A DNA stretch of 64,000 nt, from positions 62,001 through 126,000 of IMG/VR virus record IMGVR_UViG_3300027668_000008; one strand, given 5' to 3'. Shown here in pieces: positions 11,892 to 64,000 of the stretch. Every line of letters begins with the position of its first letter. Position 1 is the stretch's first letter. The notes under the pieces are model-generated. The model had not been told where the DNA came from. It did no database searches and saw only the letters and a program-made list of their open reading frames with translations. Position numbers and translations under genes: made by a program.

Positions 11892-12638
11892 TTATGCTAT
11901 TCGGTAAGTGTATATCGTATTGATAACATCACCTGCTATTAAGTTAAGCATTAGAATGCTGTCATTATCTTTAGCATATATGTATTCTGGTAATGGCTTT
12001 TCCTTTAACGGGTGTCCATAATTATACATTCTTCTTGTTTCCCATGTCCAGGGCATTCTAATATCCCCTGACATTTGGTAATTTAGTAATGCATCAATAA
12101 CATCTTCTTGTACCCAGGAATACCGTGTAATACACTTTAAATTGTACACACCATATGGCAGTTTATCTGTAACAATAACGTTAGGATCTTCTGTAAGGCT
12201 TCTAGTGATTTCAACATTTTGTATACCGGTGTCTTCGGCACGTTTAACATAATCTTCACTATTAGAATAAAAGTCAACTATTGGACATTCGACTCTAACT
12301 TTACCTTGTGGATCAAAATTTTGTCTAAAAGCATATATGCTTAATAAGTACTCTACTTCTTTCTCATCAAGAACCCAATTACCACCTTTAGTAAAAAACC
12401 CTTGAGAAGTGTTTGCATACTCGAGTTCAGTGTTACGCATACGATCTAATGTATTAAGAACTTCCAAGTCGTCCTTGTAGTGATAACAACTTCGCATTAA
12501 ACTGGCTCCTCGTCTAAGACTGAACCTAATGCGATACTTAAATCGATTATAAAATAATCTCTGATTGGTACTCATACTACTACTTATCGTATTAGTAATT
12601 GTACTATACTGCTTTTGGTTTGAATTGATCCAGTACAA
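11892..12638 (-). CDS. hypothetical protein (true start may be downstream, MSTNQRL)
   Basis: Long ORF following clpA. Confidence 0.6.
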   Translation of the reverse strand: MYWINSNQKQYSTITNTISSSMSTNQRLFYNRFKYRIRFSLRRGASLMRSCYHYKDDLEVLNTLDRMRNTELEYANTSQGFFTKGGNWVLDEKEVEYLLSIYAFRQNFDPQGKVRVECPIVDFYSNSEDYVKRAEDTGIQNVEITRSLTEDPNVIVTDKLPYGVYNLKCITRYSWVQEDVIDALLNYQMSGDIRMPWTWETRRMYNYGHPLKEKPLPEYIYAKDNDSILMLNLIAGDVINTIYTYRIA

Positions 12639-14940
12639 TCAACCCGTTTGGGTCAACGCCTGGTGCTGGTGCAACTTTATCAACAATGTTATCTTCAACT
12701 TTATATTCAAAATCGAACTTGTCTTTTACAAAGTTTAACATAATTTTAGTTCCTGCAATAGGCTTGTCTTTTATAATTGCTTTGGATAACGGAATTTTAA
12801 TATCGTTTTCAATTACACGTTTCAAAGGTCTTGCACCCATCAATGGATCGTACCCACGTTTAGCAAGTTCCTCTACTGCACTTTCGCCAATAGTAATGTG
12901 CAATCCTTTTTCAATCATTAGTTCGTTTATCTCGTCAATAAACTTAATAACAATCTTACGCATAATGCCTTGATCCAGTTTATTAAACTTAATCATTCCG
13001 TCTAATCTGTTTCTAAATTCAGGAGCAAAGAACTTTTTAACTTCTTCTGTACTTGCATTGTCATTCTCTTCTGCAGAGTTAAAGCCAATACCTCGCTTCT
13101 CAGATTCTTTAGCACCTAAGTTACTTGTTAACAATATAATACAGTTTCGAGCATCTGCTCTTTTACCGTTTGTACTTGTTACAAATCCTTCGTCCATTAA
13201 CGATAGTAATACGTTAGTAACGTCAGGGTGTGCTTTCTCAATTTCATCAAACAAGATAATAGCATTAGGATTCTTTTCAACTTGGCTTACAAGTAAACCA
13301 CCACCTAAGTTACCATCTTCGTATCCTACATATCCTGGAGGTGCTCCAATAAGTCTAGCCACTGTGTGCTTCTCTTGGTACTCTCCCATATCAAATCTTA
13401 ACAATTTCATATGTAAGTTTTCACTTAATAGTTTAGCCAACTCTGTTTTACCAGTACCTGTTGGTCCTACTAGTAAGTAACTTCCGACTGGCTTACTGTG
13501 TGATTTTAATCCTGCTCTTGTTACAATTACTCTATCCATAATTGTGTCAACTGCTTTGTCTTGTCCGTATAGTTCGTGTTTAATTTTGCTTTGAATGTCG
13601 TCTAAATCTTCTTCTTCTTTGACTCCACTACTAGAACTACCTAATTGGTCTACAGGTATCTTAACTGCTTTACTTAATTCTTCAAGTATTTGTTGCTTTG
13701 TAATTTTAAAGTTACTTCTGTTTAATAACCGTTGTTTAGCACAAGCACTATCTATTAAGTCAATTGCTTTATCAGGTAAACGTTTATCAGTTTGGAACCT
13801 TACACTTAAATCAACTGCGGCATTAATTGCATCTACTGTAATTTTTGCAGTATGATACTCTTCAAAGTATTTCTTTAATCCTTTAAGGATATCTTTAGCA
13901 ACACCTGGAGTTGGTTCATCTACTGTTAGTCTGTAGAACCTTCTCATTAATGCTCTGTCTTTTTCAAAACTTGTGTTGTATTCTTCCCAGGTTGTACTTG
14001 CAATAACTCTTAGTCCTCTGGTAATATAAGGCTTAACCATTTGTGCAAAGTCAGGACCACTACCACTAGTAGCACCTGCACCTCTCATAGTATGTGCTTC
14101 ATCGATGAATACAATACTACCTTTTTTGGCTTGTAAACTTTCAAATACGTCTTTAATTTTTTCTTCGAACTCGCCTCTGTACTTACTACCTGCAACTAAT
14201 CCACCAATATCTAAACTGTAGATTGTTGCTTCTTTTAAGTACTCAGGTACTTCGCCATTAATAATTTTGTTTGCTAGTCCTTCTGCAATAGCAGTTTTAC
14301 CAACACCGGGATCGCCAACTAGTAGTACGTTACTTTTGTTTCTTTTACCTAGTATTTGACACAGTTCATCAATTTCAAACTGTCTACCGATAACAGGATC
14401 AATTTCGCCATTTTTTGCTAACTTGTTTAAGTCTACACAGAACTCATCTAATGTACGTTCTGCTTCTTCCTTATCTAATGCATCCATATGTGGATTGTCA
14501 TGTACATAAGTTTCATTAAAGAAATCAACTAATGCTTGTTTGCCAATACCAAACTTTTTGAACAAGAATACTGAATAACCTTTGTCCTCTTGACAGATAC
14601 TTAAAAAGATATCTATCGTTTGCATATGCTCTCTGCCACCAAATAGCACTTGTGTATATGCTCTGTTGAATACACGTTCTAATGCATGAGTTCTTAGAAG
14701 TTTAATCTCTTTACCTTCTGCTGTCTTTTTACCAAAGTTGTTTTCTGTAAGATACTTTACAAATGCATCATTAAGTCCTTGCCAATCTGAGCCATACTCT
14801 TCGATCATAATCCTAAAGTTTTTATAGTTGATTAACGCAAGTGATAAGTGTTCAGTTGTAACATATGTGTGTCCGTATTTTGCCGCGAACTCACTAGCCT
14901 TTTCGACTATCATTTCTATTTCTGGGTTAGGTCTTAACAT
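12604..14940 (-). CDS. clpA: ATP-dependent Clp protease ATPase subunit, ClpA-like
   Basis: Clp N-domain; GDPGVGKT/FIDEAH; GPTGTGKT/FDEIEKAH; IGF ClpP-docking loop; no ClpB middle domain. Confidence 0.92.
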   Translation of the reverse strand: MLRPNPEIEMIVEKASEFAAKYGHTYVTTEHLSLALINYKNFRIMIEEYGSDWQGLNDAFVKYLTENNFGKKTAEGKEIKLLRTHALERVFNRAYTQVLFGGREHMQTIDIFLSICQEDKGYSVFLFKKFGIGKQALVDFFNETYVHDNPHMDALDKEEAERTLDEFCVDLNKLAKNGEIDPVIGRQFEIDELCQILGKRNKSNVLLVGDPGVGKTAIAEGLANKIINGEVPEYLKEATIYSLDIGGLVAGSKYRGEFEEKIKDVFESLQAKKGSIVFIDEAHTMRGAGATSGSGPDFAQMVKPYITRGLRVIASTTWEEYNTSFEKDRALMRRFYRLTVDEPTPGVAKDILKGLKKYFEEYHTAKITVDAINAAVDLSVRFQTDKRLPDKAIDLIDSACAKQRLLNRSNFKITKQQILEELSKAVKIPVDQLGSSSSGVKEEEDLDDIQSKIKHELYGQDKAVDTIMDRVIVTRAGLKSHSKPVGSYLLVGPTGTGKTELAKLLSENLHMKLLRFDMGEYQEKHTVARLIGAPPGYVGYEDGNLGGGLLVSQVEKNPNAIILFDEIEKAHPDVTNVLLSLMDEGFVTSTNGKRADARNCIILLTSNLGAKESEKRGIGFNSAEENDNASTEEVKKFFAPEFRNRLDGMIKFNKLDQGIMRKIVIKFIDEINELMIEKGLHITIGESAVEELAKRGYDPLMGARPLKRVIENDIKIPLSKAIIKDKPIAGTKIMLNFVKDKFDFEYKVEDNIVDKVAPAPGVDPNGLIVLDQFKPKAV

Positions 14941-46543: not shown

Positions 46544-46617
46544 TGGCTGGGATACAAGGATTCGAACCTCGATTGACTGGATCAAAACCAGTTGTCCTAC
46601 CATTAGACGATATCCCA
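46544..46617 (-). tRNA. tRNA-Gln(TTG)
   Basis: TGGGATA/TATCCCA acceptor, ACTGG-TTTTGAT-CCAGT anticodon arm, GGTTCGAATCC, encoded CCA. Confidence 0.95.
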
Positions 46618-46638
46618 ACGTTTTTGTTAATTTCTGGG

Positions 46639-46724
46639 TGGTGCGAATGGAGGGACTCGAACCCACACACCTTAAAGATAACGGATTTTAAGTCCGTTGC
46701 GTCTACCTATTCCGCCACACTCGC
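46639..46724 (-). tRNA. tRNA-Leu(TAA)
   Basis: GCGAGTG/CATTCGC acceptor, ACGGA-CTTAAAA-TCCGT, long variable arm, encoded CCA. Confidence 0.95.
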
Positions 46725-46726
46725 TT

Positions 46727-46908
46727 TTACTCACCCAAATTCGCTTTTCTTTTTAAGTCGTTTACTCTATCAACTAACCAACCAATAGCAGTATGTATAT
46801 GTCCAGTATCATGTTCTCTTATACAACTCTTGGCATATTTTATTTCTTCGTTTAGTATGCGAATCTTTGTTGTTGTATCAAAGATGTTTTCTTTTTCTTT
46901 CTTCATAA
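46727..46908 (-). CDS. small hypothetical protein between tRNAs (start about MKKEKEN; coordinate approximate)
   Basis: The track ORF's 5' part overlaps tRNA-Trp; the downstream part ..HDTGHIHTAI.WL looks coding. Confidence 0.55.
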
Positions 46909-46920
46909 TTTCCCCAACGT

Positions 46921-46995
46921 TGGCATAGGTGTACGGATTCGAACCGCAAATTTTGGATTTGGAATCCAACGTGTTACCGTTAACACCACACCCAT
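46921..46995 (-). tRNA. tRNA-Trp(CCA)
   Basis: ATGGGTG/CACCTAT acceptor, TTGGA-TTCCAAA-TCCAA, GGTTCGAATCC, encoded CCA. Confidence 0.93.
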
Positions 46996-50769: not shown

Positions 50770-50846
50770 TGGCCTGCCCTAGAGGATTCGAACCTCTGAC
50801 CTAGTGCTTAGAAGGCACTTGCTCTATCCAACTGAGCTAAGGGCAG
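50770..50846 (-). tRNA. tRNA-Arg(TCT)
   Basis: CTGCCCT/AGGGCAG acceptor, AGTGC-CTTCTAA-GCACT, GGTTCGAATCC, encoded CCA. Confidence 0.96.
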
Positions 50847-58736: not shown

Positions 58737-59071
58737 TATTTGCTATCCCTTTCGTCAACCATTTTACGAATTATTGCCATATAGTTCTCATTAGTAGGTT
58801 CCATGCCATATTGCTTACACAATTTCTTTGCTTGTGGAGTAACAAAACCTTTAGATTCTAGTATTGTTAACGGACTTTCACCTGCTTTATATCTAGCAAA
58901 ATACTCATCAGTAGTAAAGTTTTTAATAAGAAAAGACTTAAATGCACCTGCAAATTTAACATATTTAAACCTAGCAACAAACTCATTGTTACCATAATGT
59001 TGTGTACTATCGTTGTTATACGTTAAGTACATTCCGTCATAATTAAAATTGTCTTTTACAAATGTTGTCAT
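58736..59071 (-). CDS. conserved hypothetical early protein
   Basis: FVARFKY..FKSFLIKNFT..EYF. Confidence 0.65.
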   Translation of the reverse strand: MTTFVKDNFNYDGMYLTYNNDSTQHYGNNEFVARFKYVKFAGAFKSFLIKNFTTDEYFARYKAGESPLTILESKGFVTPQAKKLCKQYGMEPTNENYMAIIRKMVDERDSK

Positions 59072-59130
59072 TTAGTATCTCCTTTTGTTTAACTTATACT
59101 TTATAATAGCACATCTAGCCTGTTTGTCAA
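59072..59130 (-). promoter_or_regulatory. early sigma70 promoter with conserved leader
   Basis: TTGACA-N16-TATTAT; TATAAGTTAAACAAAAGGAGAT. Confidence 0.88.
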
Positions 59131-59170
59131 CCTTTTATTTTAGTGCTATTATATTGGCTTTTTTGTTAAC

Positions 59171-59593
59171 TTACTCACTAATTATAGCATCTTTCATCGC
59201 TTTGTCAACCATTTCTTGGTCGTCTTCGACTTCATCATATGCCATCTTTTTCTTTAAAAGCGAAGTATCTGTAGCACTTAAACGGACATCACTATCACTA
59301 TTAAACATTGCTTGTTCTAATAAGAACATCTGTTCTAACCCATCATTGTTCCATATTGTGTTTAATAGTTCATTAACTTTTTCTATATCCATTCGACGAA
59401 GACGATACTGTTGAAAATGTCGTTGCAAGTATGCATGGAACACTTCCGGAATCTTCTTGTAATCACTAAATGCAAATGTACCCTTAAATCCTGCAGGGTG
59501 GTGGATGTTGTTAAGCAAATGTGGTTGATTGTAGTAATCAATCTTTGTTTGTACACAATCATCTAAACTACGTTCATATACTGTAATACCCAT
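59171..59593 (-). CDS. hypothetical protein
   Basis: Promoter TTGACG-N18-TATAAT at 59630-59659; AAGGA SD. Confidence 0.6.
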   Translation of the reverse strand: MGITVYERSLDDCVQTKIDYYNQPHLLNNIHHPAGFKGTFAFSDYKKIPEVFHAYLQRHFQQYRLRRMDIEKVNELLNTIWNNDGLEQMFLLEQAMFNSDSDVRLSATDTSLLKKKMAYDEVEDDQEMVDKAMKDAIISE

Positions 59594-59680
59594 AATACCT
59601 TTCCTTTAGTTTTTCTTAATTACGAAACAATTATAACACAAAATAAACCCACCCGTCAACCTTTTTGGGTAAATAATTGT

Positions 59681-59881
59681 ATGAGATATAGTCATAAGAA
59701 TATTGTACTTGAGTACGCAACTACAAGATCAAGGTTATATATCGATGATAGATTGGTGTTTTTAGGTTCCGGGCTTATTGCTATAAAAATGTTTATAGAA
59801 CAATCGGGAAATAATCCTGCGGTTATAGAACGTTTTAAGGCTCAATTATTTTACCCAACAAACGCTCGTTCTAATGTATAA
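59681..59881 (+). CDS. hypothetical late protein, probably leaderless
   Basis: TAAATA at 59670-59675, 5 nt before ATG. Confidence 0.5.
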   Translation: MRYSHKNIVLEYATTRSRLYIDDRLVFLGSGLIAIKMFIEQSGNNPAVIERFKAQLFYPTNARSNV

Positions 59882-60573
59882 GATCCTGCAGAACGATTGT
59901 TCCCTTCAGTGTAACCTTTGTCTTCTAAACGTTGTTTCATTTCTAAGTTAAAATCCATGCTACCACATATCATAACTTTATCAGTTTTTGGAGTAATGTC
60001 GTCCCATATACCGGCGTCAATGTATTTGGTAATTCGTCCTTGGTTCTTAAATTCTTCTCTAGTTACTGTTGGGAAATATGTAATGTCTTGTTCTTCTAAG
60101 AATGTGTTATATGATCTCAAATCTTGTACAAGTGGAACAGTCCAATACACTGATATACTATCAAAGTAATCATATGTTGTTGGGTCTCTTAATAAACTAA
60201 TAAACGGAGCAATGCCTGTACCAGTTGCAACTAAATGCAAATTGCCTCCTAGTTCTAAATTATTAAGTGTAAGAGTGCCAGTGGGTTTTTCACCTACTAT
60301 TAATTCATCATCTACTTTAATATCTTTTAGTCTACTAGTTAATGGACCATCTTCTACTTTAATACTGTAGAATTCTAAAAACTCATCATACGGTCCACTA
60401 GTAAAACTGTATGCTCTCATTATAGGTTTATTTTTTTGTAGTTTTTTTGACCAGTTATCTAATCCAATCATAGTAAACTCACCCGCAACAAATCTGTATG
60501 TTGGTGGTCTTTCTAATTTTATTTTAAATAGTTTATCAGTGTAATGTGTAACTTCTATGACTTTTAAATTCAT
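59851..60573 (-). CDS. fpr: ferredoxin/flavodoxin-NADP+ reductase
   Basis: GEFTMIGL, RAYS, GPLTSRL, TGTGIAPF, MICGS, ERAFVG. Confidence 0.93.
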   Translation of the reverse strand: MNLKVIEVTHYTDKLFKIKLERPPTYRFVAGEFTMIGLDNWSKKLQKNKPIMRAYSFTSGPYDEFLEFYSIKVEDGPLTSRLKDIKVDDELIVGEKPTGTLTLNNLELGGNLHLVATGTGIAPFISLLRDPTTYDYFDSISVYWTVPLVQDLRSYNTFLEEQDITYFPTVTREEFKNQGRITKYIDAGIWDDITPKTDKVMICGSMDFNLEMKQRLEDKGYTEGNNRSAGSYTLERAFVG

Positions 60574-60574
60574 A

Positions 60575-61207
60575 TTATTTTACAAATGTTCCTTGCTTTA
60601 ATTTTCCTACAACAGAGTCATATGTTTCACCTAAACATTTTAGTCTAAGAATTACACGTTCTGAGGTTATCTCTGGAACACCGTGTACTGCCATTCCGTT
60701 AAACATAGTAGGGTGTTCTAGACTATAATGATGTAAGTAATCTATATCATTATCGTCCCAACCGTATTTCTTTTCGTAGTTGATATTTCTTTCTGGTTCA
60801 ATACCTTCTCTACTAAAGAAACTAATAGGAGTAATGTCTTTTACAGGTAATATTGGAAACATAATAGCACAATTCATAAAATGATCAGTATGTGGGTGAA
60901 ACTTGTAACCAACATCATAATGTAGTATATCAATATGGTCTGGATCAGGATATTCGCCCCAATTAAACTTATCTACTAAATCTCTAACAACAGGAAAGTC
61001 TAACAAAGACATATCGTTCTTTTTCCTTATTGCTATTGTATTCATTCCTTGCCGACCTTTAAATTCTCTTTTAGTACCTCTTGCTAGATACTGCATATAA
61101 TCACCAAAGTTTTCTATAAGGTGTCTATGCTCTTCAAATAAATCTTCCAAGGCTTGTCGGTCATAAGTTACTTCATCTATTTCTGTGTGAAACTTGCCTT
61201 GTATCAT
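60575..61207 (-). CDS. 2OG-Fe(II) oxygenase-like protein
   Basis: PHTD, VHGV, RVILR. Confidence 0.7.
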   Translation of the reverse strand: MIQGKFHTEIDEVTYDRQALEDLFEEHRHLIENFGDYMQYLARGTKREFKGRQGMNTIAIRKKNDMSLLDFPVVRDLVDKFNWGEYPDPDHIDILHYDVGYKFHPHTDHFMNCAIMFPILPVKDITPISFFSREGIEPERNINYEKKYGWDDNDIDYLHHYSLEHPTMFNGMAVHGVPEITSERVILRLKCLGETYDSVVGKLKQGTFVK

Positions 61208-61210
61208 TTT

Positions 61211-61570
61211 TTAAATGTATCCTATTAATGTAACTATAACAAAGTAATTTATATAATGTAATGCTTGGTCAATAGTTTGTAATCCCCAAAACATTTTGCC
61301 ATTTTTAATTACTTTGTACTTGTTTAATATTATGTGTTTTAACCAATCTATTATACAATGTGTAGTGTAATCAAACATTGATAATAGTAATGCATATTTG
61401 ATATCTATAAAGAATAGTAATATGATTAGTGTTGCTACTGCATGGTCAATACAGTGTCTATGTAAACCTCGATTAAATAAGTTGCTCTTATCTGCGGATG
61501 GTCGTGTTGACTGCATGAATAAGTCACAAAATGTGTGCTTAATCAGAAGTAAAATAAAGACGGATGTCAT
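61211..61570 (-). CDS. DUF3307-like membrane protein
   Basis: KH..CD..Q, H..DH, H..ID..K, DQALH. Confidence 0.75.
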   Translation of the reverse strand: MTSVFILLLIKHTFCDLFMQSTRPSADKSNLFNRGLHRHCIDHAVATLIILLFFIDIKYALLLSMFDYTTHCIIDWLKHIILNKYKVIKNGKMFWGLQTIDQALHYINYFVIVTLIGYI

Positions 61571-61602
61571 ATGTTTCTCGATGTGTAAAGGACAATTAGT
61601 GG

Positions 61603-61717
61603 GTTGGAGAGAGAGTATTCAAATCCGTTAACACGTGAACTAATAATTAGTTTTTTCAAATCCGACCAATAAATTTAGTAATAGATATTACTAGGGAAAT
61701 TAGCACTTCCCTCCAAC
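61603..61717 (-). ncRNA. candidate structured RNA downstream of late promoter
   Basis: Closing stem GUUGGAG/CUCCAAC, three internal hairpins, duplicated CGGAUUUGAA; TAAATA at 61725-61730. Confidence 0.55.
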
Positions 61718-61723
61718 GTACAA

Positions 61724-62131
61724 CTATTTATCTAATACAATGAATACGCCTTGGTCTAAGGTAAAAATGTCAAACCCCCACCCTGTAATGCTTTGCCTGC
61801 CACCACCGACAGTTTTGTCGTCTACCATCTTCTCATCACTTACTGTACTACTATAATGCCATAGACCGTCTTTTTCCACCATAGCAAACTGCATACCTTC
61901 AACCATGTCAGCATTCATACTATATAAGGACCCACTATCCTTATCCCAATATATGCCAAAATACCCACGATGATCGTCAAGTCTAGGCTTGGACTTGTAA
62001 AAAATGTCAACAGGCACGTCAGGCTTATCGAGCTCAGTAGTGCAAATGTATCGTACTTCGCCTCCGGTTTCGACTCCATAATATTTCTCCACTTGATCAG
62101 TATCAGTTAAAGGTTCGTGATTAATCTTCAT
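61724..62131 (-). CDS. conserved hypothetical phage protein
   Basis: Y.CTT..PVDIFY..YFG..YS..GGR. Confidence 0.65.
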   Translation of the reverse strand: MKINHEPLTDTDQVEKYYGVETGGEVRYICTTELDKPDVPVDIFYKSKPRLDDHRGYFGIYWDKDSGSLYSMNADMVEGMQFAMVEKDGLWHYSSTVSDEKMVDDKTVGGGRQSITGWGFDIFTLDQGVFIVLDK

Positions 62132-62318
62132 TATTCTCTTTATCTATTTTATCCACTGTTTGATGTATTCTGTCATCTGTTATATCAATAACACCAGATT
62201 GTTGTAATACGTCTAATGTCGTAGTAACACCGTGTTCTACTCCTGCTTTCCAATTATAATAAGCACAAGCACCTGTAAAGATTATAAACGCACTGCAATG
62301 CCAAACTGTTAATACCAT
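62121..62318 (-). CDS. small membrane protein
   Basis: TM helix then G...G...TLD.L. Confidence 0.55.
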   Translation of the reverse strand: MVLTVWHCSAFIIFTGACAYYNWKAGVEHGVTTTLDVLQQSGVIDITDDRIHQTVDKIDKENNED

Positions 62319-62329
62319 AACATTACCTC

Positions 62330-63358
62330 TTAATTGTTAAAAGATTCAAAGAATTTTATACTTGCTAAATTCTTTGCTTTTGATTCTACCATAATATCTG
62401 CAAACTCATTAAATGTGGATGCCCAAGTATTTACCGCATTATTCCACATAAAGTCACTATGTCCACGCATCTTGCCTTTTTTGTAACCTTGTTCTAATAA
62501 TAATTCCTTATCAGGTAATGTGTTAACATCGTGGTCTATAAGATAGTCAAGTCTACTTACTGAATAATGCATTGCAGGACGTAAGCCACGCCAACTATCT
62601 ATTACGCCTTTAAATCTATCATCGGAGGGTTGTATGTATTCACCACTTTTGACCCAGTGATGGTGTATGTCAAGTACGAGTGCGAGGTGCTTGCCAAGTT
62701 CGAGACTGTCTTCGATGCCCCACGAGTTTTCGTCGTTTTCAATGGTAATAACATTTCTCGCCTCTTTAGAAAGTCTTGGGAGGACATTAATGATACCGGT
62801 TGGACCTTGTCTACCTGATATATGGACATTGCATTTGAAGTCTTGGAACTCCTTGCCGTAGCCCATGAATTTGATGCAATCAACATGATATTCGAACTCC
62901 TCTATACTACGTTCTACAACTTCGGGCCTATCACTTGCTAATACAACAAATTGACCAGGGTGCATACTAAGACGTACATCATGTTGTCTGGCAATGTCGC
63001 CTACTTTAATTAAGTTGTCTTCTAAATATTTTTGTACATATGCTTGTTGCCAAAAGTAACGCCAACTAGGTTCTGTGTATGCTGGTAGCAAGTCACTGCC
63101 TAGTCTAAGCATTCTTAGTTCTGGTTGTAATGTACTTACATAGGTAATAAGATTTTTGTACGATTCAATATTATGAACCATAATATCCCAAAGTCGTTGT
63201 TCAGCAACTTCTTTAGTTTGCCTATTAAGCCATGAGATTGTTGTCGACCTACTGTTGTAAGGACGTTGCAGTTCTTCTAATACTTTTTTATTTTGGGTTT
63301 GATCTGCTACCATGTACTTACAAGCGAAACCAACTCTTTTTATATCTTGATTAAACAT
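62330..63358 (-). CDS. uvsE: UV damage endonuclease
   Basis: GFACK, RLGSD, RLSMHPGQF, IENDE, LDIHHH, HSD, MVESK.K. Confidence 0.93.
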   Translation of the reverse strand: MFNQDIKRVGFACKYMVADQTQNKKVLEELQRPYNSRSTTISWLNRQTKEVAEQRLWDIMVHNIESYKNLITYVSTLQPELRMLRLGSDLLPAYTEPSWRYFWQQAYVQKYLEDNLIKVGDIARQHDVRLSMHPGQFVVLASDRPEVVERSIEEFEYHVDCIKFMGYGKEFQDFKCNVHISGRQGPTGIINVLPRLSKEARNVITIENDENSWGIEDSLELGKHLALVLDIHHHWVKSGEYIQPSDDRFKGVIDSWRGLRPAMHYSVSRLDYLIDHDVNTLPDKELLLEQGYKKGKMRGHSDFMWNNAVNTWASTFNEFADIMVESKAKNLASIKFFESFNN

Positions 63359-63407
63359 AATATCCTATACATTAAACTAAACATAACACTATGTTAGCAC
63401 AATTATA

Positions 63408-64000
63408 TTATGTTGTCAACAGTTGATTTTCTAAGTTTTCGTAAGTATCGGCATACGCATTTGGGTGATTTAAAAGACTGTCCGGTGTCCAGTCATTAAC
63501 AAATATAAACTTAACATCGTTGAAGTGTTCAATAATGTGTCCTATTTGTTGGACATCATATCCCATGTCACGTTGCTTTGCAGTTTCTTTTGGATTGTTT
63601 TGTGATCCTGAATAGATACAATTAATTGCACCAAAAGGATTTTTCATTGATCGTTCGCCAGAACCAATAAAATCATAACCAATAATAGTTACAATTTCAT
63701 TTTCTAATGCGGCAAGTAGTATTGCATAAGAACCGGATGTCCAATTCTTTTCTTCATCTTTTTCGTGTGTAATAGTGTAAGGTATTTCTGGTAATACTTG
63801 TAAGTATGGATTCTTAACAATGTTGATTAAGTCAGTTGTTGTAAACAAGTAGGACTTTTTTTGTAAATTGTGTTCCACTGCTTCTTGTAAATGATGTAAC
63901 TTATTACAAACTATATTCTCTACAACAAAGTCTCTGTGAATACTGTTACACCCATATGTAATACCTCTGCCAAAAAGTTTTCGTAAATCAAAATCTTTCC
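63408..64000 (-). CDS. hypothetical protein (DUF115/MptE-like fold suspected), 5'-truncated by window edge
   Basis: Frame stays open upstream of track start (..DLRKLFGRGITYGCNSIHRDF..); W.SG..A; IIGYD. Confidence 0.55.
   Translation of the reverse strand, partial: KDFDLRKLFGRGITYGCNSIHRDFVVENIVCNKLHHLQEAVEHNLQKKSYLFTTTDLINIVKNPYLQVLPEIPYTITHEKDEEKNWTSGSYAILLAALENEIVTIIGYDFIGSGERSMKNPFGAINCIYSGSQNNPKETAKQRDMGYDVQQIGHIIEHFNDVKFIFVNDWTPDSLLNHPNAYADTYENLENQLLTT

What the first reader, a model, noticed from the sequence alone, without database searches (positions are those of the whole stretch)
61603..61730. Multi-hairpin non-coding RNA with duplicated CGGAUUUGAA behind a late promoter
Seen (minus strand): TAAATA (61725-30) lies 7 nt before GUUGGAG..CUCCAAC, which closes a 115-nt domain. 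Inside are hairpins GGAAGU-GCUA-AUUUCC, UAGUAAU-AUCU-AUUACUA (61676-93) and AACUAA-UUA-UUAGUU (61638-52). The last is flanked by two exact CGGAUUUGAA copies (61655-64, 61618-27). The 5' GGGAAGUG can pair either locally or with the 3' UACUCUCU, so two conformations are possible. The element sits in front of DUF3307 - 2OG oxygenase - fpr. Inference: (a) a cis-regulatory switch; (b) a protein sponge with two sites (GGA motifs, CsrA/Rsm-like); or (c) speculatively, tRNA binding, because GGAUUUGAA complements the T-loop consensus UUCRAAUCC.
Basis: partly seen in the sequence, partly recalled or inferred. Interest (0 to 1): 0.65.

Follow-up and report, generated by a model that had tools for sequence, protein, structure and literature searches.

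The report
Conserved structured leader RNA in jumbo phage
A roughly 115-base RNA that folds into four helices sits just behind a late promoter and ahead of a small redox-gene cluster in one lineage of uncultured marine T4-like giant phages; it is real, conserved and matches no catalogued RNA family, but what it does has not been shown.

Summary
The element is the 153-nt gap between a 135-aa ORF and a DUF3307 membrane-protein gene, in a 306.7-kb marine phage record that encodes a gp55-type late sigma factor. I found 18 distinct homologous copies in marine and one sediment metagenomes, always in the same gene order. They keep a four-helix junction. P1 and P3 are nearly invariant. P2 has a variable loop. 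P4 appears as seven different but always self-complementary stems. Two junction strands are almost invariant. Element identity averages 79%, against 52% for the spacer to the start codon. One close pair of sequences differs at three bases: two form a compensatory G-C/A-U change in P1 and the third gives a G-U pair in P3. GATAAATA is invariant 5 or 7 nt upstream. Genome-wide, ATAAATA sits within 60 nt upstream of a gene start at 47 of 77 sites. No Rfam family matches, even at permissive thresholds. The exact 10-mer duplication and its complementarity to tRNA T-loops occur only in some lineages, so the sponge and tRNA-binding ideas fail. Best reading: an autonomous, cis-acting 5' leader domain of a late mRNA. 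Mechanism and any ligand are unknown, no expression platform was found, and transcription is not shown.

The parts
61725..61732 (-). GATAAATA, a predicted gp55-dependent (T4-type, NATAAATA) late promoter. It overlaps codons Asp-Lys-stop of the upstream ORF.
   Evidence: Invariant in all distinct homologues, 5 or 7 nt before P1. Codon bias alone would keep GAT-AAA-TAR with p about 0.38 per lineage, or about 0.001 over 7 clades. ATAAATA lies within 60 nt upstream of a same-strand ORF start at 47 of 77 sites, against 8-25% for control heptamers. The genome has a late sigma factor, phrog_12791, E 3e-75. The motif is named in PMC2984593. The transcription start is not measured.
61703..61717 (-). 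P1 5' strand GUUGGAG (61717-61711), running into GGG and the P2 5' arm. GUUGGAGGG is invariant except for one G-to-A change.
   Evidence: All 7 P1 pairs form in 18 of 18 distinct sequences. L003 against L034 shows a G-C to A-U double change.
61694..61711 (-). P2 hairpin GGGAAGU / GCUA / AUUUCCC. Its first G can pair either here or in P1.
   Evidence: A hairpin can form in all homologues. The loop varies in sequence and length (5 of 5 loop columns vary). Stem changes are wobble-compatible, and extra pairs appear in the window clade and in L004.
61676..61693 (-). P3 hairpin UAGUAAU / AUCU / AUUACUA. The loop is UUCG in all other clades.
   Evidence: The stem is invariant apart from one A-to-G change that gives G-U. 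100% of cells are paired.
61653..61675 (-). Junction strand J3/4, with the near-invariant core AAUUU(A)UUGGUCGGAUU. It holds the first CGGAUUUGAA copy at 61664-61655.
   Evidence: Only 1 of 17 core columns varies among 18 distinct sequences.
61638..61652 (-). P4 hairpin AACUAA / UUA / UUAGUU, the variable peripheral helix.
   Evidence: The homologues carry seven different stem versions, all self-complementary. The loop-closing pair is G-C in 8 and A-U in 6 distinct sequences.
61610..61637 (-). Junction strand J4/1, with conserved AACGGA (61629-61624), a variable triplet, and GAAU (61620-61617). It holds the second CGGAUUUGAA copy at 61627-61618.
   Evidence: 5 of 14 core columns vary. The three central bases vary freely.
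61603..61611 (-). P1 3' strand CUCCAAC (61609-61603), plus the conserved CU that allows a 9-bp P1.
61571..61602 (-). Poorly conserved 21-32-nt spacer to the DUF3307 start codon. Any Shine-Dalgarno sequence is weak.
   Evidence: Mean pairwise identity is 52%, against 79% for the element. The region is predicted mostly unpaired and shows no conserved pairing with the element.
61211..61570 (-). DUF3307-family, His-rich membrane protein (119 aa). It is the first gene behind the element.
   Evidence: phrog_2470, E 2.6e-16. PF11750 on the homologues.
60575..61207 (-). 210-aa protein with an invariant HPHTDH...VHGV motif. It may be a 2OG/Fe(II) oxygenase, but this is unconfirmed.
   Evidence: No family or PDB hit. 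A weak atlas lead. Alignment A5. The gene is absent in L012-L015 although the element is kept.
59851..60573 (-). Bacterial-type ferredoxin-NADP(H) reductase (240 aa).
   Evidence: PDB 2bgi, E 2.2e-56. NF008178, E 7e-29, below its curated cut-off.
61724..62131 (-). Upstream 135-aa ORF of unknown function. Its last codons carry the promoter motif.
   Evidence: 12 homologue clusters at 59-97% identity. The C-terminal Asp-Lys-stop is invariant while the preceding residues vary.

Best explanation
The element is a lineage-specific structured RNA domain of about 108-117 nt. It lies at the 5' end of a late (gp55-dependent) transcript that continues into the DUF3307 - (2OG-like) - ferredoxin-NADP reductase genes of an uncultured marine T4-like jumbo phage lineage.

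It folds on its own into a four-helix junction:
- P1 closes the domain.
- P2 and P4 are peripheral hairpins with free loops.
- P3 is invariant.
- Two nearly invariant single strands, UUGGUCGGAUU and AACGGA-NNN-GAAU, face the junction.

I infer that it acts in cis on the downstream mRNA. The conserved junction would be a recognition surface for a factor, either a protein or a small molecule. P1, placed 0-2 nt from the predicted 5' end, would also protect the message.

Shown here: sequence and structure conservation, synteny, promoter motif conservation, and absence from Rfam.

Inferred: transcription from the TAAATA site, cis action, and factor binding. The identity of any ligand is unknown.
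For: - Distribution: 18 distinct copies among 21 covariance-model hits, all between the 135-aa ORF and DUF3307, with model scores of 95-132 bits.
- Pairing: 94.3% of pair cells are canonical, against 26-58% when partners are slid. Four pairs show double changes. The covariation score is exceeded by 2 of 500 shuffles.
- Close pair L003/L034 differs at 3 bases. Two are a compensatory P1 pair and one gives G-U in P3.
- P4 occurs as seven different self-complementary stems.
- Variation is confined to loops, P4 and flanks. J3/4 varies at 1 of 17 core columns.
- Element identity is 79%, against 52% for the adjacent spacer and 63% for four-fold synonymous sites of the neighbouring gene.
- Nine homologues fold with z = -2.2 to -3.8.
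- Stops occur in all frames and indels are not multiples of three.
- Promoter.
- The element folds as an autonomous domain with the start region left open.
- The element is kept when the 2OG-like gene is lost. It is absent where the 135-aa ORF homologue is not followed by DUF3307.
Against: - There is no direct evidence of transcription. Four metatranscriptome contig sets cover parts of the flanking genes, but no contig covers 61463-62064.
- Covariation is thin. There are about 7 clades, and P1, P3 and the junctions are nearly invariant, which says nothing about pairing.
- No terminator, anti-terminator or conserved Shine-Dalgarno-sequestering platform was found, so a regulatory read-out is not visible.
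- The distribution is narrow. The element is absent upstream of distant DUF3307 genes. One narrow pattern scan of bacterial genomes gave only chance hits.
- High conservation could partly reflect the shallow depth of the lineage.
- RNAalifold prefers partly different pairings.
Confidence: 0.5

Rival explanations
1. It is a true small-molecule riboswitch. The junction strands would form a ligand pocket for a metabolite or ion linked to the redox operon, such as 2-oxoglutarate, NADP(H), a flavin or a metal. Ligand binding would shift the competition of the shared GGG between P1 and P2. This is a sub-case of the best explanation.
For: - A multi-helix junction with an invariant unpaired core and variable periphery.
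- A 5'-UTR position ahead of auxiliary metabolic-type genes.
- The P1/P2 alternative pairing can form in all homologues.
- There is precedent for candidate riboswitches in T4-like marine phages, the manA and wcaG motifs (PMC2864571).
Against: - No expression platform. There is no terminator, and the start region is predicted open and not paired with the element.
- The alternative pairing shows no covariation.
- The element is restricted to one phage lineage, with no bacterial representatives found.
- No ligand can be inferred, because DUF3307 and the 210-aa protein have no known function.
Confidence: 0.15
2. It is a stand-alone small RNA. It would be made from the late promoter and released by processing just after P1, and would act in trans as a decoy, sponge or guide for a host or phage factor.
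For: - It is an autonomous, closed domain whose ends are brought together by P1.
- The sequence after P1 is unconserved.
- An AU-rich single strand next to hairpins resembles Hfq or RNase E sites. This rests on my own knowledge, not on a test.
Against: - There is no terminator after P1.
- It is always directly upstream of DUF3307, in the same orientation, 21-32 nt from the start codon.
- No complementarity of the conserved core to anything else in the genome.
- There is a single copy per genome.
Confidence: 0.15
3. It is a generic 5'-terminal or intercistronic stability and processing structure. It would work through helices alone as an RNase barrier or RNase III/E site, or as the 3' end of the upstream ORF's message, with no specific partner.
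For: - P1 lies 0-2 nt from the predicted start, assuming T4-like spacing. Such stems are known to stabilise E. coli mRNAs (my own knowledge).
- The element begins 6 nt after the upstream stop codon.
Against: - A stability element does not need 30 or more invariant unpaired bases or an invariant P3 sequence.
- The promoter motif places the element in the downstream transcript.
- There is no U-tract.
Confidence: 0.12
4. It is a CsrA/Rsm-type protein sponge with two GGA sites, or a tRNA T-loop-binding RNA. These are the reader's options b and c.
For: In the window's own lineage the two 10-mers are identical. They are complementary, with one mismatch, to the T-arms of two of the phage's own tRNA genes.
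Against: - The duplication and the T-loop complementarity are not conserved. The central triplet varies.
- The GGA motifs lie in junction strands, not hairpin loops.
- There are only two of them, and there is no terminator.
- No Rfam CsrB, Rsm or T-box hit at E up to 10.
Confidence: 0.03
5. It is a DNA-level element, such as a protein-binding site or replication or recombination signal, or a chance palindrome cluster, and is not an RNA.
For: It contains several inverted repeats and an invariant block of about 34 bp.
Against: - G-U pairs work on one strand only. The sense-strand covariance-model score is 95-132 bits, against 23 or less for the antisense strand.
- There are compensatory changes, and P4 stem sequences are swapped while pairing is kept.
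Confidence: 0.05

Closest known systems
manA (RF01745), wcaG (RF01761) and PhotoRC-II (RF01717) motifs: candidate cis-regulatory RNAs of T4-like cyanophages and marine metagenomes (PMC2864571)
   Same: All are structured, conserved RNA domains in presumed 5' UTRs of auxiliary metabolic-type genes. They occur in T4-like marine phages, are known mainly from metagenomes, and have unknown ligands or partners.
   Different: There is no sequence or structure match to any of them (Rfam scans). The architecture differs: a four-helix junction with long conserved junction strands. The downstream genes differ (DUF3307, FPR). The distribution is much narrower, and no bacterial copies were found.
T4-type late promoter (TATAAATA in T4, NATAAATA in cyanomyoviruses)
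   Same: GATAAATA fits the cyanomyovirus consensus. The genome has a gp55-type sigma factor, and the motif is strongly enriched 20-45 nt upstream of gene starts.
   Different: The leader here is 155 nt, one of the longest in the genome. The motif is embedded in the last codons of the upstream gene. The start site is not mapped.
Four-way-junction riboswitch aptamers, for example SAM-I, yybP-ykoY (Mn2+) and czcD (NiCo). This comparison rests on my own knowledge of their architecture.
   Same: Four helices surround a junction, with conserved junction nucleotides, variable peripheral helices and a 5'-UTR location.
   Different: None of these models matches. There is no expression platform, no wide phylogenetic spread and no known ligand.
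5'-terminal stabiliser stem-loops of bacterial and phage mRNAs, for example the ompA leader (my own knowledge)
   Same: A stable helix lies within about 2 nt of the predicted 5' end of the transcript.
   Different: It is far more elaborate than a stabiliser needs, and its unpaired strands are conserved in sequence.

Membership tests
Any Rfam 15 family, including riboswitches, ribozymes, CsrB/Rsm, T-box, tRNA-like, Y RNA, manA, wcaG and PhotoRC | A covariance-model match at or near the family's gathering score | tested here: not met
   The window at gathering thresholds gives only 4 tRNAs, all elsewhere. The 501-nt region at E up to 10 gives two snoRNA chance hits at 18-22 bits, against gathering scores of 70-80. 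Eight homologous loci at E up to 5 give nothing. ARAGORN finds no tRNA or tmRNA.
Riboswitch (as a class) | A conserved aptamer fold supported by covariation | tested here: inconclusive
   The fold is kept in 18 distinct sequences. Four pairs show double changes and P4 has seven stem versions. P1, P3 and the junctions are nearly invariant, and only about 7 clades exist.
Riboswitch (as a class) | An expression platform, either a terminator/antiterminator or Shine-Dalgarno sequestration, coupled to the aptamer | tested here: not met
   No terminator-like site in 59000-64000. The start region is predicted 39-77% unpaired, with no conserved partner in the element. The spacer is unconserved.
Riboswitch (as a class) | Direct, selective ligand binding | not testable with these tools
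   This needs in-line probing, ITC or SHAPE.
CsrA/RsmA-sequestering sRNA | Multiple A(N)GGA motifs presented in hairpin loops, with a terminator | tested here: not met
   There are two conserved CGGA motifs, both in junction strands, and no terminator. The duplication is not conserved.
tRNA-binding leader (T-box-like or T-loop-complementary) | Conserved complementarity to a tRNA element | tested here: not met
   The central triplet of GGA-NNN-GAA is UUU, ACG, ACA, UUA, UUG, UAG or AAU in different clades. There is no T-box hit.
T4-type late promoter | A (N/T)ATAAATA motif at about -10 | tested here: met
   GATAAATA at 61732-61725 is invariant in all homologues. The consensus comes from PMC2984593.
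T4-type late promoter | The phage encodes the gp55 late sigma factor and uses the motif genome-wide | tested here: met
   A 282-aa ORF at G000:C1 about 248.2-249.0 kb matches phrog_12791 at E 3e-75 and T4 gp55 at E 2e-6. 47 of 77 ATAAATA sites lie within 60 nt upstream of a same-strand ORF start.
T4-type late promoter | Transcription starts a few nt downstream of the motif, late in infection | not testable with these tools
   Only Logan contigs of metatranscriptomes were available, and none covers the element.

The most novel reading that the evidence does not exclude
The element is the aptamer of a previously unknown riboswitch or factor-sensing RNA class that exists only in phages. Through it, a giant marine phage would tune late expression of a membrane His-rich protein / oxygenase / ferredoxin-NADP reductase module to the redox or metabolic state of the infected cell.
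Probability: 0.15. Interest if true: 0.8.

Novelty: new member of a known kind. Interest (0 to 1): 0.45.

Why it matters
Structured regulatory RNAs of phages are poorly catalogued, and those of uncultured jumbo phages even less so. This is a clean candidate for a new RNA family. It has a defined promoter context and a compact four-helix architecture. Its junction strands are under clear purifying selection, and it is constantly linked to an uncharacterised redox gene set (DUF3307, a possible oxygenase, FPR).

If the element binds a ligand or protein, it would give a handle on the function of DUF3307. It would also show how T4-like marine phages regulate auxiliary metabolic genes after transcription. 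If it is only a stability element, it is a minor annotation.

Tried and rejected
- DNA similarity search against GenBank phages found no match.
- blastn-short of the element against its own genome, and the covariance model against the whole genome, found a single copy only.
- Exact-pattern scans of viral contigs returned only the three syntenic contigs plus one chance hit, L007.
- The covariance model on about 80 loci whose 135-aa ORF homologue is 50% identical or less found nothing. Those loci have a different downstream gene and a short spacer.
- The covariance model with filters off, upstream of distant DUF3307 genes, scored 9 bits or less.
- A 22-bit hit in related record G005 lies inside a coding region and is chance.
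- The bacterial and archaeal genome pattern scan gave 10 hits, the number expected by chance. The two best lie in an ABC-ATPase gene.
- The alternative pairing of the P2 region with J4/1 can form everywhere, but cognate pairs are no better than non-cognate ones (-6.4 against -5.9 kcal/mol).
- Other candidate helices do not hold up. GAUU:AAUC and the AAUUU/GGAUU mini-hairpin involve invariant bases, so they cannot be tested. The CGU/ACG mini-hairpin is not conserved.
- RNAalifold on the plain MAFFT alignment gave an odd pairing in place of P3. The window lineage's own loop changes break it.
- Metatranscriptome contigs were uninformative for the element.
- Literature searches for DUF3307 and for phage RNA motifs found nothing on this element.
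- The AlphaFold model of the 210-aa protein has pLDDT 48 and was not used.

Full report
**Where it is**

The window is bases 62001-126000 of a 306,714-bp IMG/VR virus record with about 35% GC, estimated 87% complete. Genes in this part run on the minus strand.

The finding is the 153-nt gap (61571-61723) between a 135-aa ORF of unknown function (61724-62131) and a DUF3307-family membrane protein (61211-61570). After that come a 210-aa protein (60575-61207) and a bacterial-type ferredoxin-NADP(H) reductase (59851-60573).

The phage is T4-like in its transcription apparatus and in its nearest cultured relatives:
- It encodes a gp55-type late sigma factor (phrog_12791, E 3e-75; T4 gp55, E 2e-6).
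- A large protein finds only weak partial matches, to Methylophilales phage Melnitz and to KVP40-like Vibrio phages.

**The observation**

- TAAATA is part of GATAAATA (61732-61725), which overlaps the Asp-Lys-stop codons of the upstream ORF.
- GUUGGAG and CUCCAAC close a 115-nt domain.
- The three hairpins and the two exact CGGAUUUGAA copies are real. The 10-mer occurs nowhere else in the genome.
- The domain folds better than dinucleotide shuffles (z = -2.67). With the flanks included, z is -1.46.

**Homologues**

The upstream ORF has 12 homologue clusters at 59-97% identity. I fetched their contigs and scanned JGI metagenomes and IMG/VR with a protein alignment. This gave loci from marine and one sediment metagenomes, including a 305.7-kb contig.

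All loci whose ORF is at least 57% identical share one gene order: UvdE, a small ORF, the 135-aa ORF, a gap of about 140 nt, DUF3307, optionally the 210-aa gene, then FPR.

A covariance model built from 11 sequences finds the element in all of these loci at 95-132 bits. That gives 21 hits and 18 distinct sequences, with antisense scores of 23 bits or less.

The element is absent in the following places:
- From loci whose ORF homologue is 50% identical or less. There a different gene follows directly.
- From upstream of distant DUF3307 genes.
- From elsewhere in its own genome and from related viral records.
- From bacterial and archaeal genomes, as far as one narrow pattern scan can tell.

**Structure**

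The conserved architecture is a four-helix junction.

| Part | Window sequence | Behaviour across 18 distinct sequences |
|---|---|---|
| P1 | GUUGGAG / CUCCAAC | Pairs in all 18; extendable to 9 bp through invariant GG and CU |
| P2 | GGGAAG... / ...CUUCCC | Forms everywhere; loop varies in sequence and length; stem changes are wobble-compatible |
| P3 | UAGUAAU / AUUACUA | Invariant apart from one A-to-G change giving G-U; loop is UUCG except in the window lineage (AUCU) |
| P4 | AACUAA / UUAGUU | Seven different stem versions, all self-complementary; loop-closing pair G-C in 8 and A-U in 6 |

These rows rest.

Further points on the fold:
- Over the 23 modelled pairs, 94.3% of cells are canonical, against 26-58% when partners are slid. 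Four pairs show changes on both sides. The covariation score is exceeded by 2 of 500 shuffles.
- The most telling case is the close pair L003/L034. They differ at three bases. Two form a G-C to A-U compensatory change in P1, and the third turns an A-U into G-U in P3.
- Variation falls in the flanks (6 of 6 columns), the P2 loop (5 of 5), the P4 region (29 of 30) and the first part of J4/1 (9 of 9).
- The J3/4 core (AAUUU-UUGGUCGGAUU) varies at 1 of 17 columns. P1 and P3 each vary at 3 of 14.
- Mean pairwise identity is 79% for the element. It is 52% for the 21-32-nt spacer to the start codon, and 63% at four-fold synonymous sites of the neighbouring ORF.
- Nine representatives fold with z = -2.2 to -3.8.
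- All three frames carry stops, and indels are not multiples of three, so the element is non-coding.
- G-U pairs and the strand asymmetry of the model scores fix the RNA to the gene strand.

**Limits of the structural case**
- There are only about seven clades.
- P1, P3 and the junction strands hardly vary, which is neutral for pairing.
- RNAalifold proposes partly different pairings made only of invariant bases: a 9-bp P1, UCC with GGA, and a small AAUUU/GGAUU hairpin.
In it, the 5' GGG and P2 region pair with the 3' pyrimidine strand and GAAUC. Cognate sequence pairs are no better than non-cognate ones (-6.4 against -5.9 kcal/mol), so there is no evolutionary evidence for a switch.

**Promoter**
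- GATAAATA is invariant in all distinct homologues, 5 or 7 nt before P1.
- The two C-terminal residues of the upstream protein are invariant while the preceding ones vary. Their synonymous positions are fixed. Codon bias alone gives about 0.38 per lineage, or about 0.001 over seven clades.
- Genome-wide, 47 of 77 ATAAATA sites lie within 60 nt upstream of a same-strand ORF start, against 8-25% for control heptamers. The typical leader is 20-45 nt.
- The leader here is 155 nt, among the longest.
- NATAAATA is the published late-promoter consensus of T4-like cyanomyoviruses (PMC2984593).
- With T4-like spacing (my own knowledge), the transcript would start 0-2 nt before P1.

This is strong indirect support, but no start site has been measured. 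Contigs from four metatranscriptomes cover parts of DUF3307, the 210-aa gene, FPR and the upstream genes. None covers 61463-62064.

**What it is not**
- No Rfam 15 family matches. This holds at gathering thresholds, at E up to 10 on the region, and at E up to 5 on eight homologous loci. ARAGORN finds nothing.
- The exact 10-mer duplication is confined to the window's lineage. The conserved parts are GGUCGGAUU and AACGGA-NNN-GAAU.
- The central triplet varies freely, so complementarity to tRNA T-loops is not a conserved property.
- The two GGA motifs lie in junction strands, not loops, and there is no terminator. A CsrA-type sponge therefore does not fit.

**How it probably works**

The domain folds autonomously. 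The translation start region of DUF3307 is predicted mostly open and has no conserved partner in the element. There is no terminator.

So the element lacks a recognisable riboswitch expression platform. Yet its unpaired strands and the P3 sequence are conserved far beyond what a simple stabilising stem needs.

I therefore favour a cis-acting 5' leader domain of the late DUF3307/FPR message. Its junction would be recognised by some factor, and its terminal P1 may also protect the mRNA (confidence 0.5).

Alternatives:
- A true small-molecule riboswitch, as a sub-case (0.15).
- A processed stand-alone sRNA (0.15).
- A generic stability or processing structure (0.12).
- A DNA-level element (0.05).
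- The sponge or tRNA-binding ideas (0.03).

**Comparison with what is known**

The closest known things are the orphan cis-regulatory motifs of T4-like marine phages: manA, wcaG and PhotoRC-II (PMC2864571). The kind of element and the ecological setting are the same. The fold and the associated genes are different, and there is no model match. I class it as a new family of a known kind.

**Side point**

The '2OG oxygenase' label is unconfirmed. The 210-aa protein has an invariant HPHTDH...VHGV motif and a weak language-model lead to 2OG-Fe(II) and Asp/Arg-hydroxylase clusters. It has no family or PDB sequence hit, and the AlphaFold model is unusable. The gene is missing in one clade that keeps the RNA element.

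Noticed in passing
window 46547-46995 and 50773-50846 (minus strand): Four tRNA genes (Rfam tRNA, 58-70 bits). Two have T-arms that match the complement of the element's 10-mer with one mismatch.
   Followed up: partly
G000:C1 about 248160-249008 (minus strand), outside the window; L141:1354-2202: A 282-aa gp55-type late sigma factor (phrog_12791, E 3e-75). This marks the jumbo phage as using T4-style late transcription.
   Followed up: yes
G000:C1 8597(+), 162881(-), 1025(+), 183115(-), 144577(-): Other ATAAATA late-promoter-like sites with unusually long leaders of 113-188 nt. They might hold further structured leaders.
   Followed up: no
window 59208-59181 and 59659-59630 (minus strand): Near-perfect sigma-70-type promoter matches (12 of 12 and 11 of 12, with extended -10 TG) just downstream of the FPR gene.
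   Followed up: no
window 12604-14940 (minus strand): A 778-aa Lon-like ATP-dependent protease (phrog_4871, E 2e-228), encoded by the phage.
   Followed up: no
window 61211-61570 (minus strand): The DUF3307 protein has invariant His/Asp-rich motifs (KHT..D, HRHC.DH, DY..H..ID, DQA.HY). With an FPR gene adjacent, these suggest a metal-dependent membrane redox enzyme. This is inference only.
   Followed up: no
L012-L015 (3409-3412 junction); L017:3235-3414: One clade lacks the 210-aa gene, so DUF3307 abuts FPR, yet it keeps the RNA element. In L017, DUF3307 is called only as a 59-aa ORF, which may be a frameshift or an assembly error.
   Followed up: partly
G000:C1:259518-272054 (plus strand): A single 4178-aa open reading frame, the largest in the genome.
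   Followed up: no
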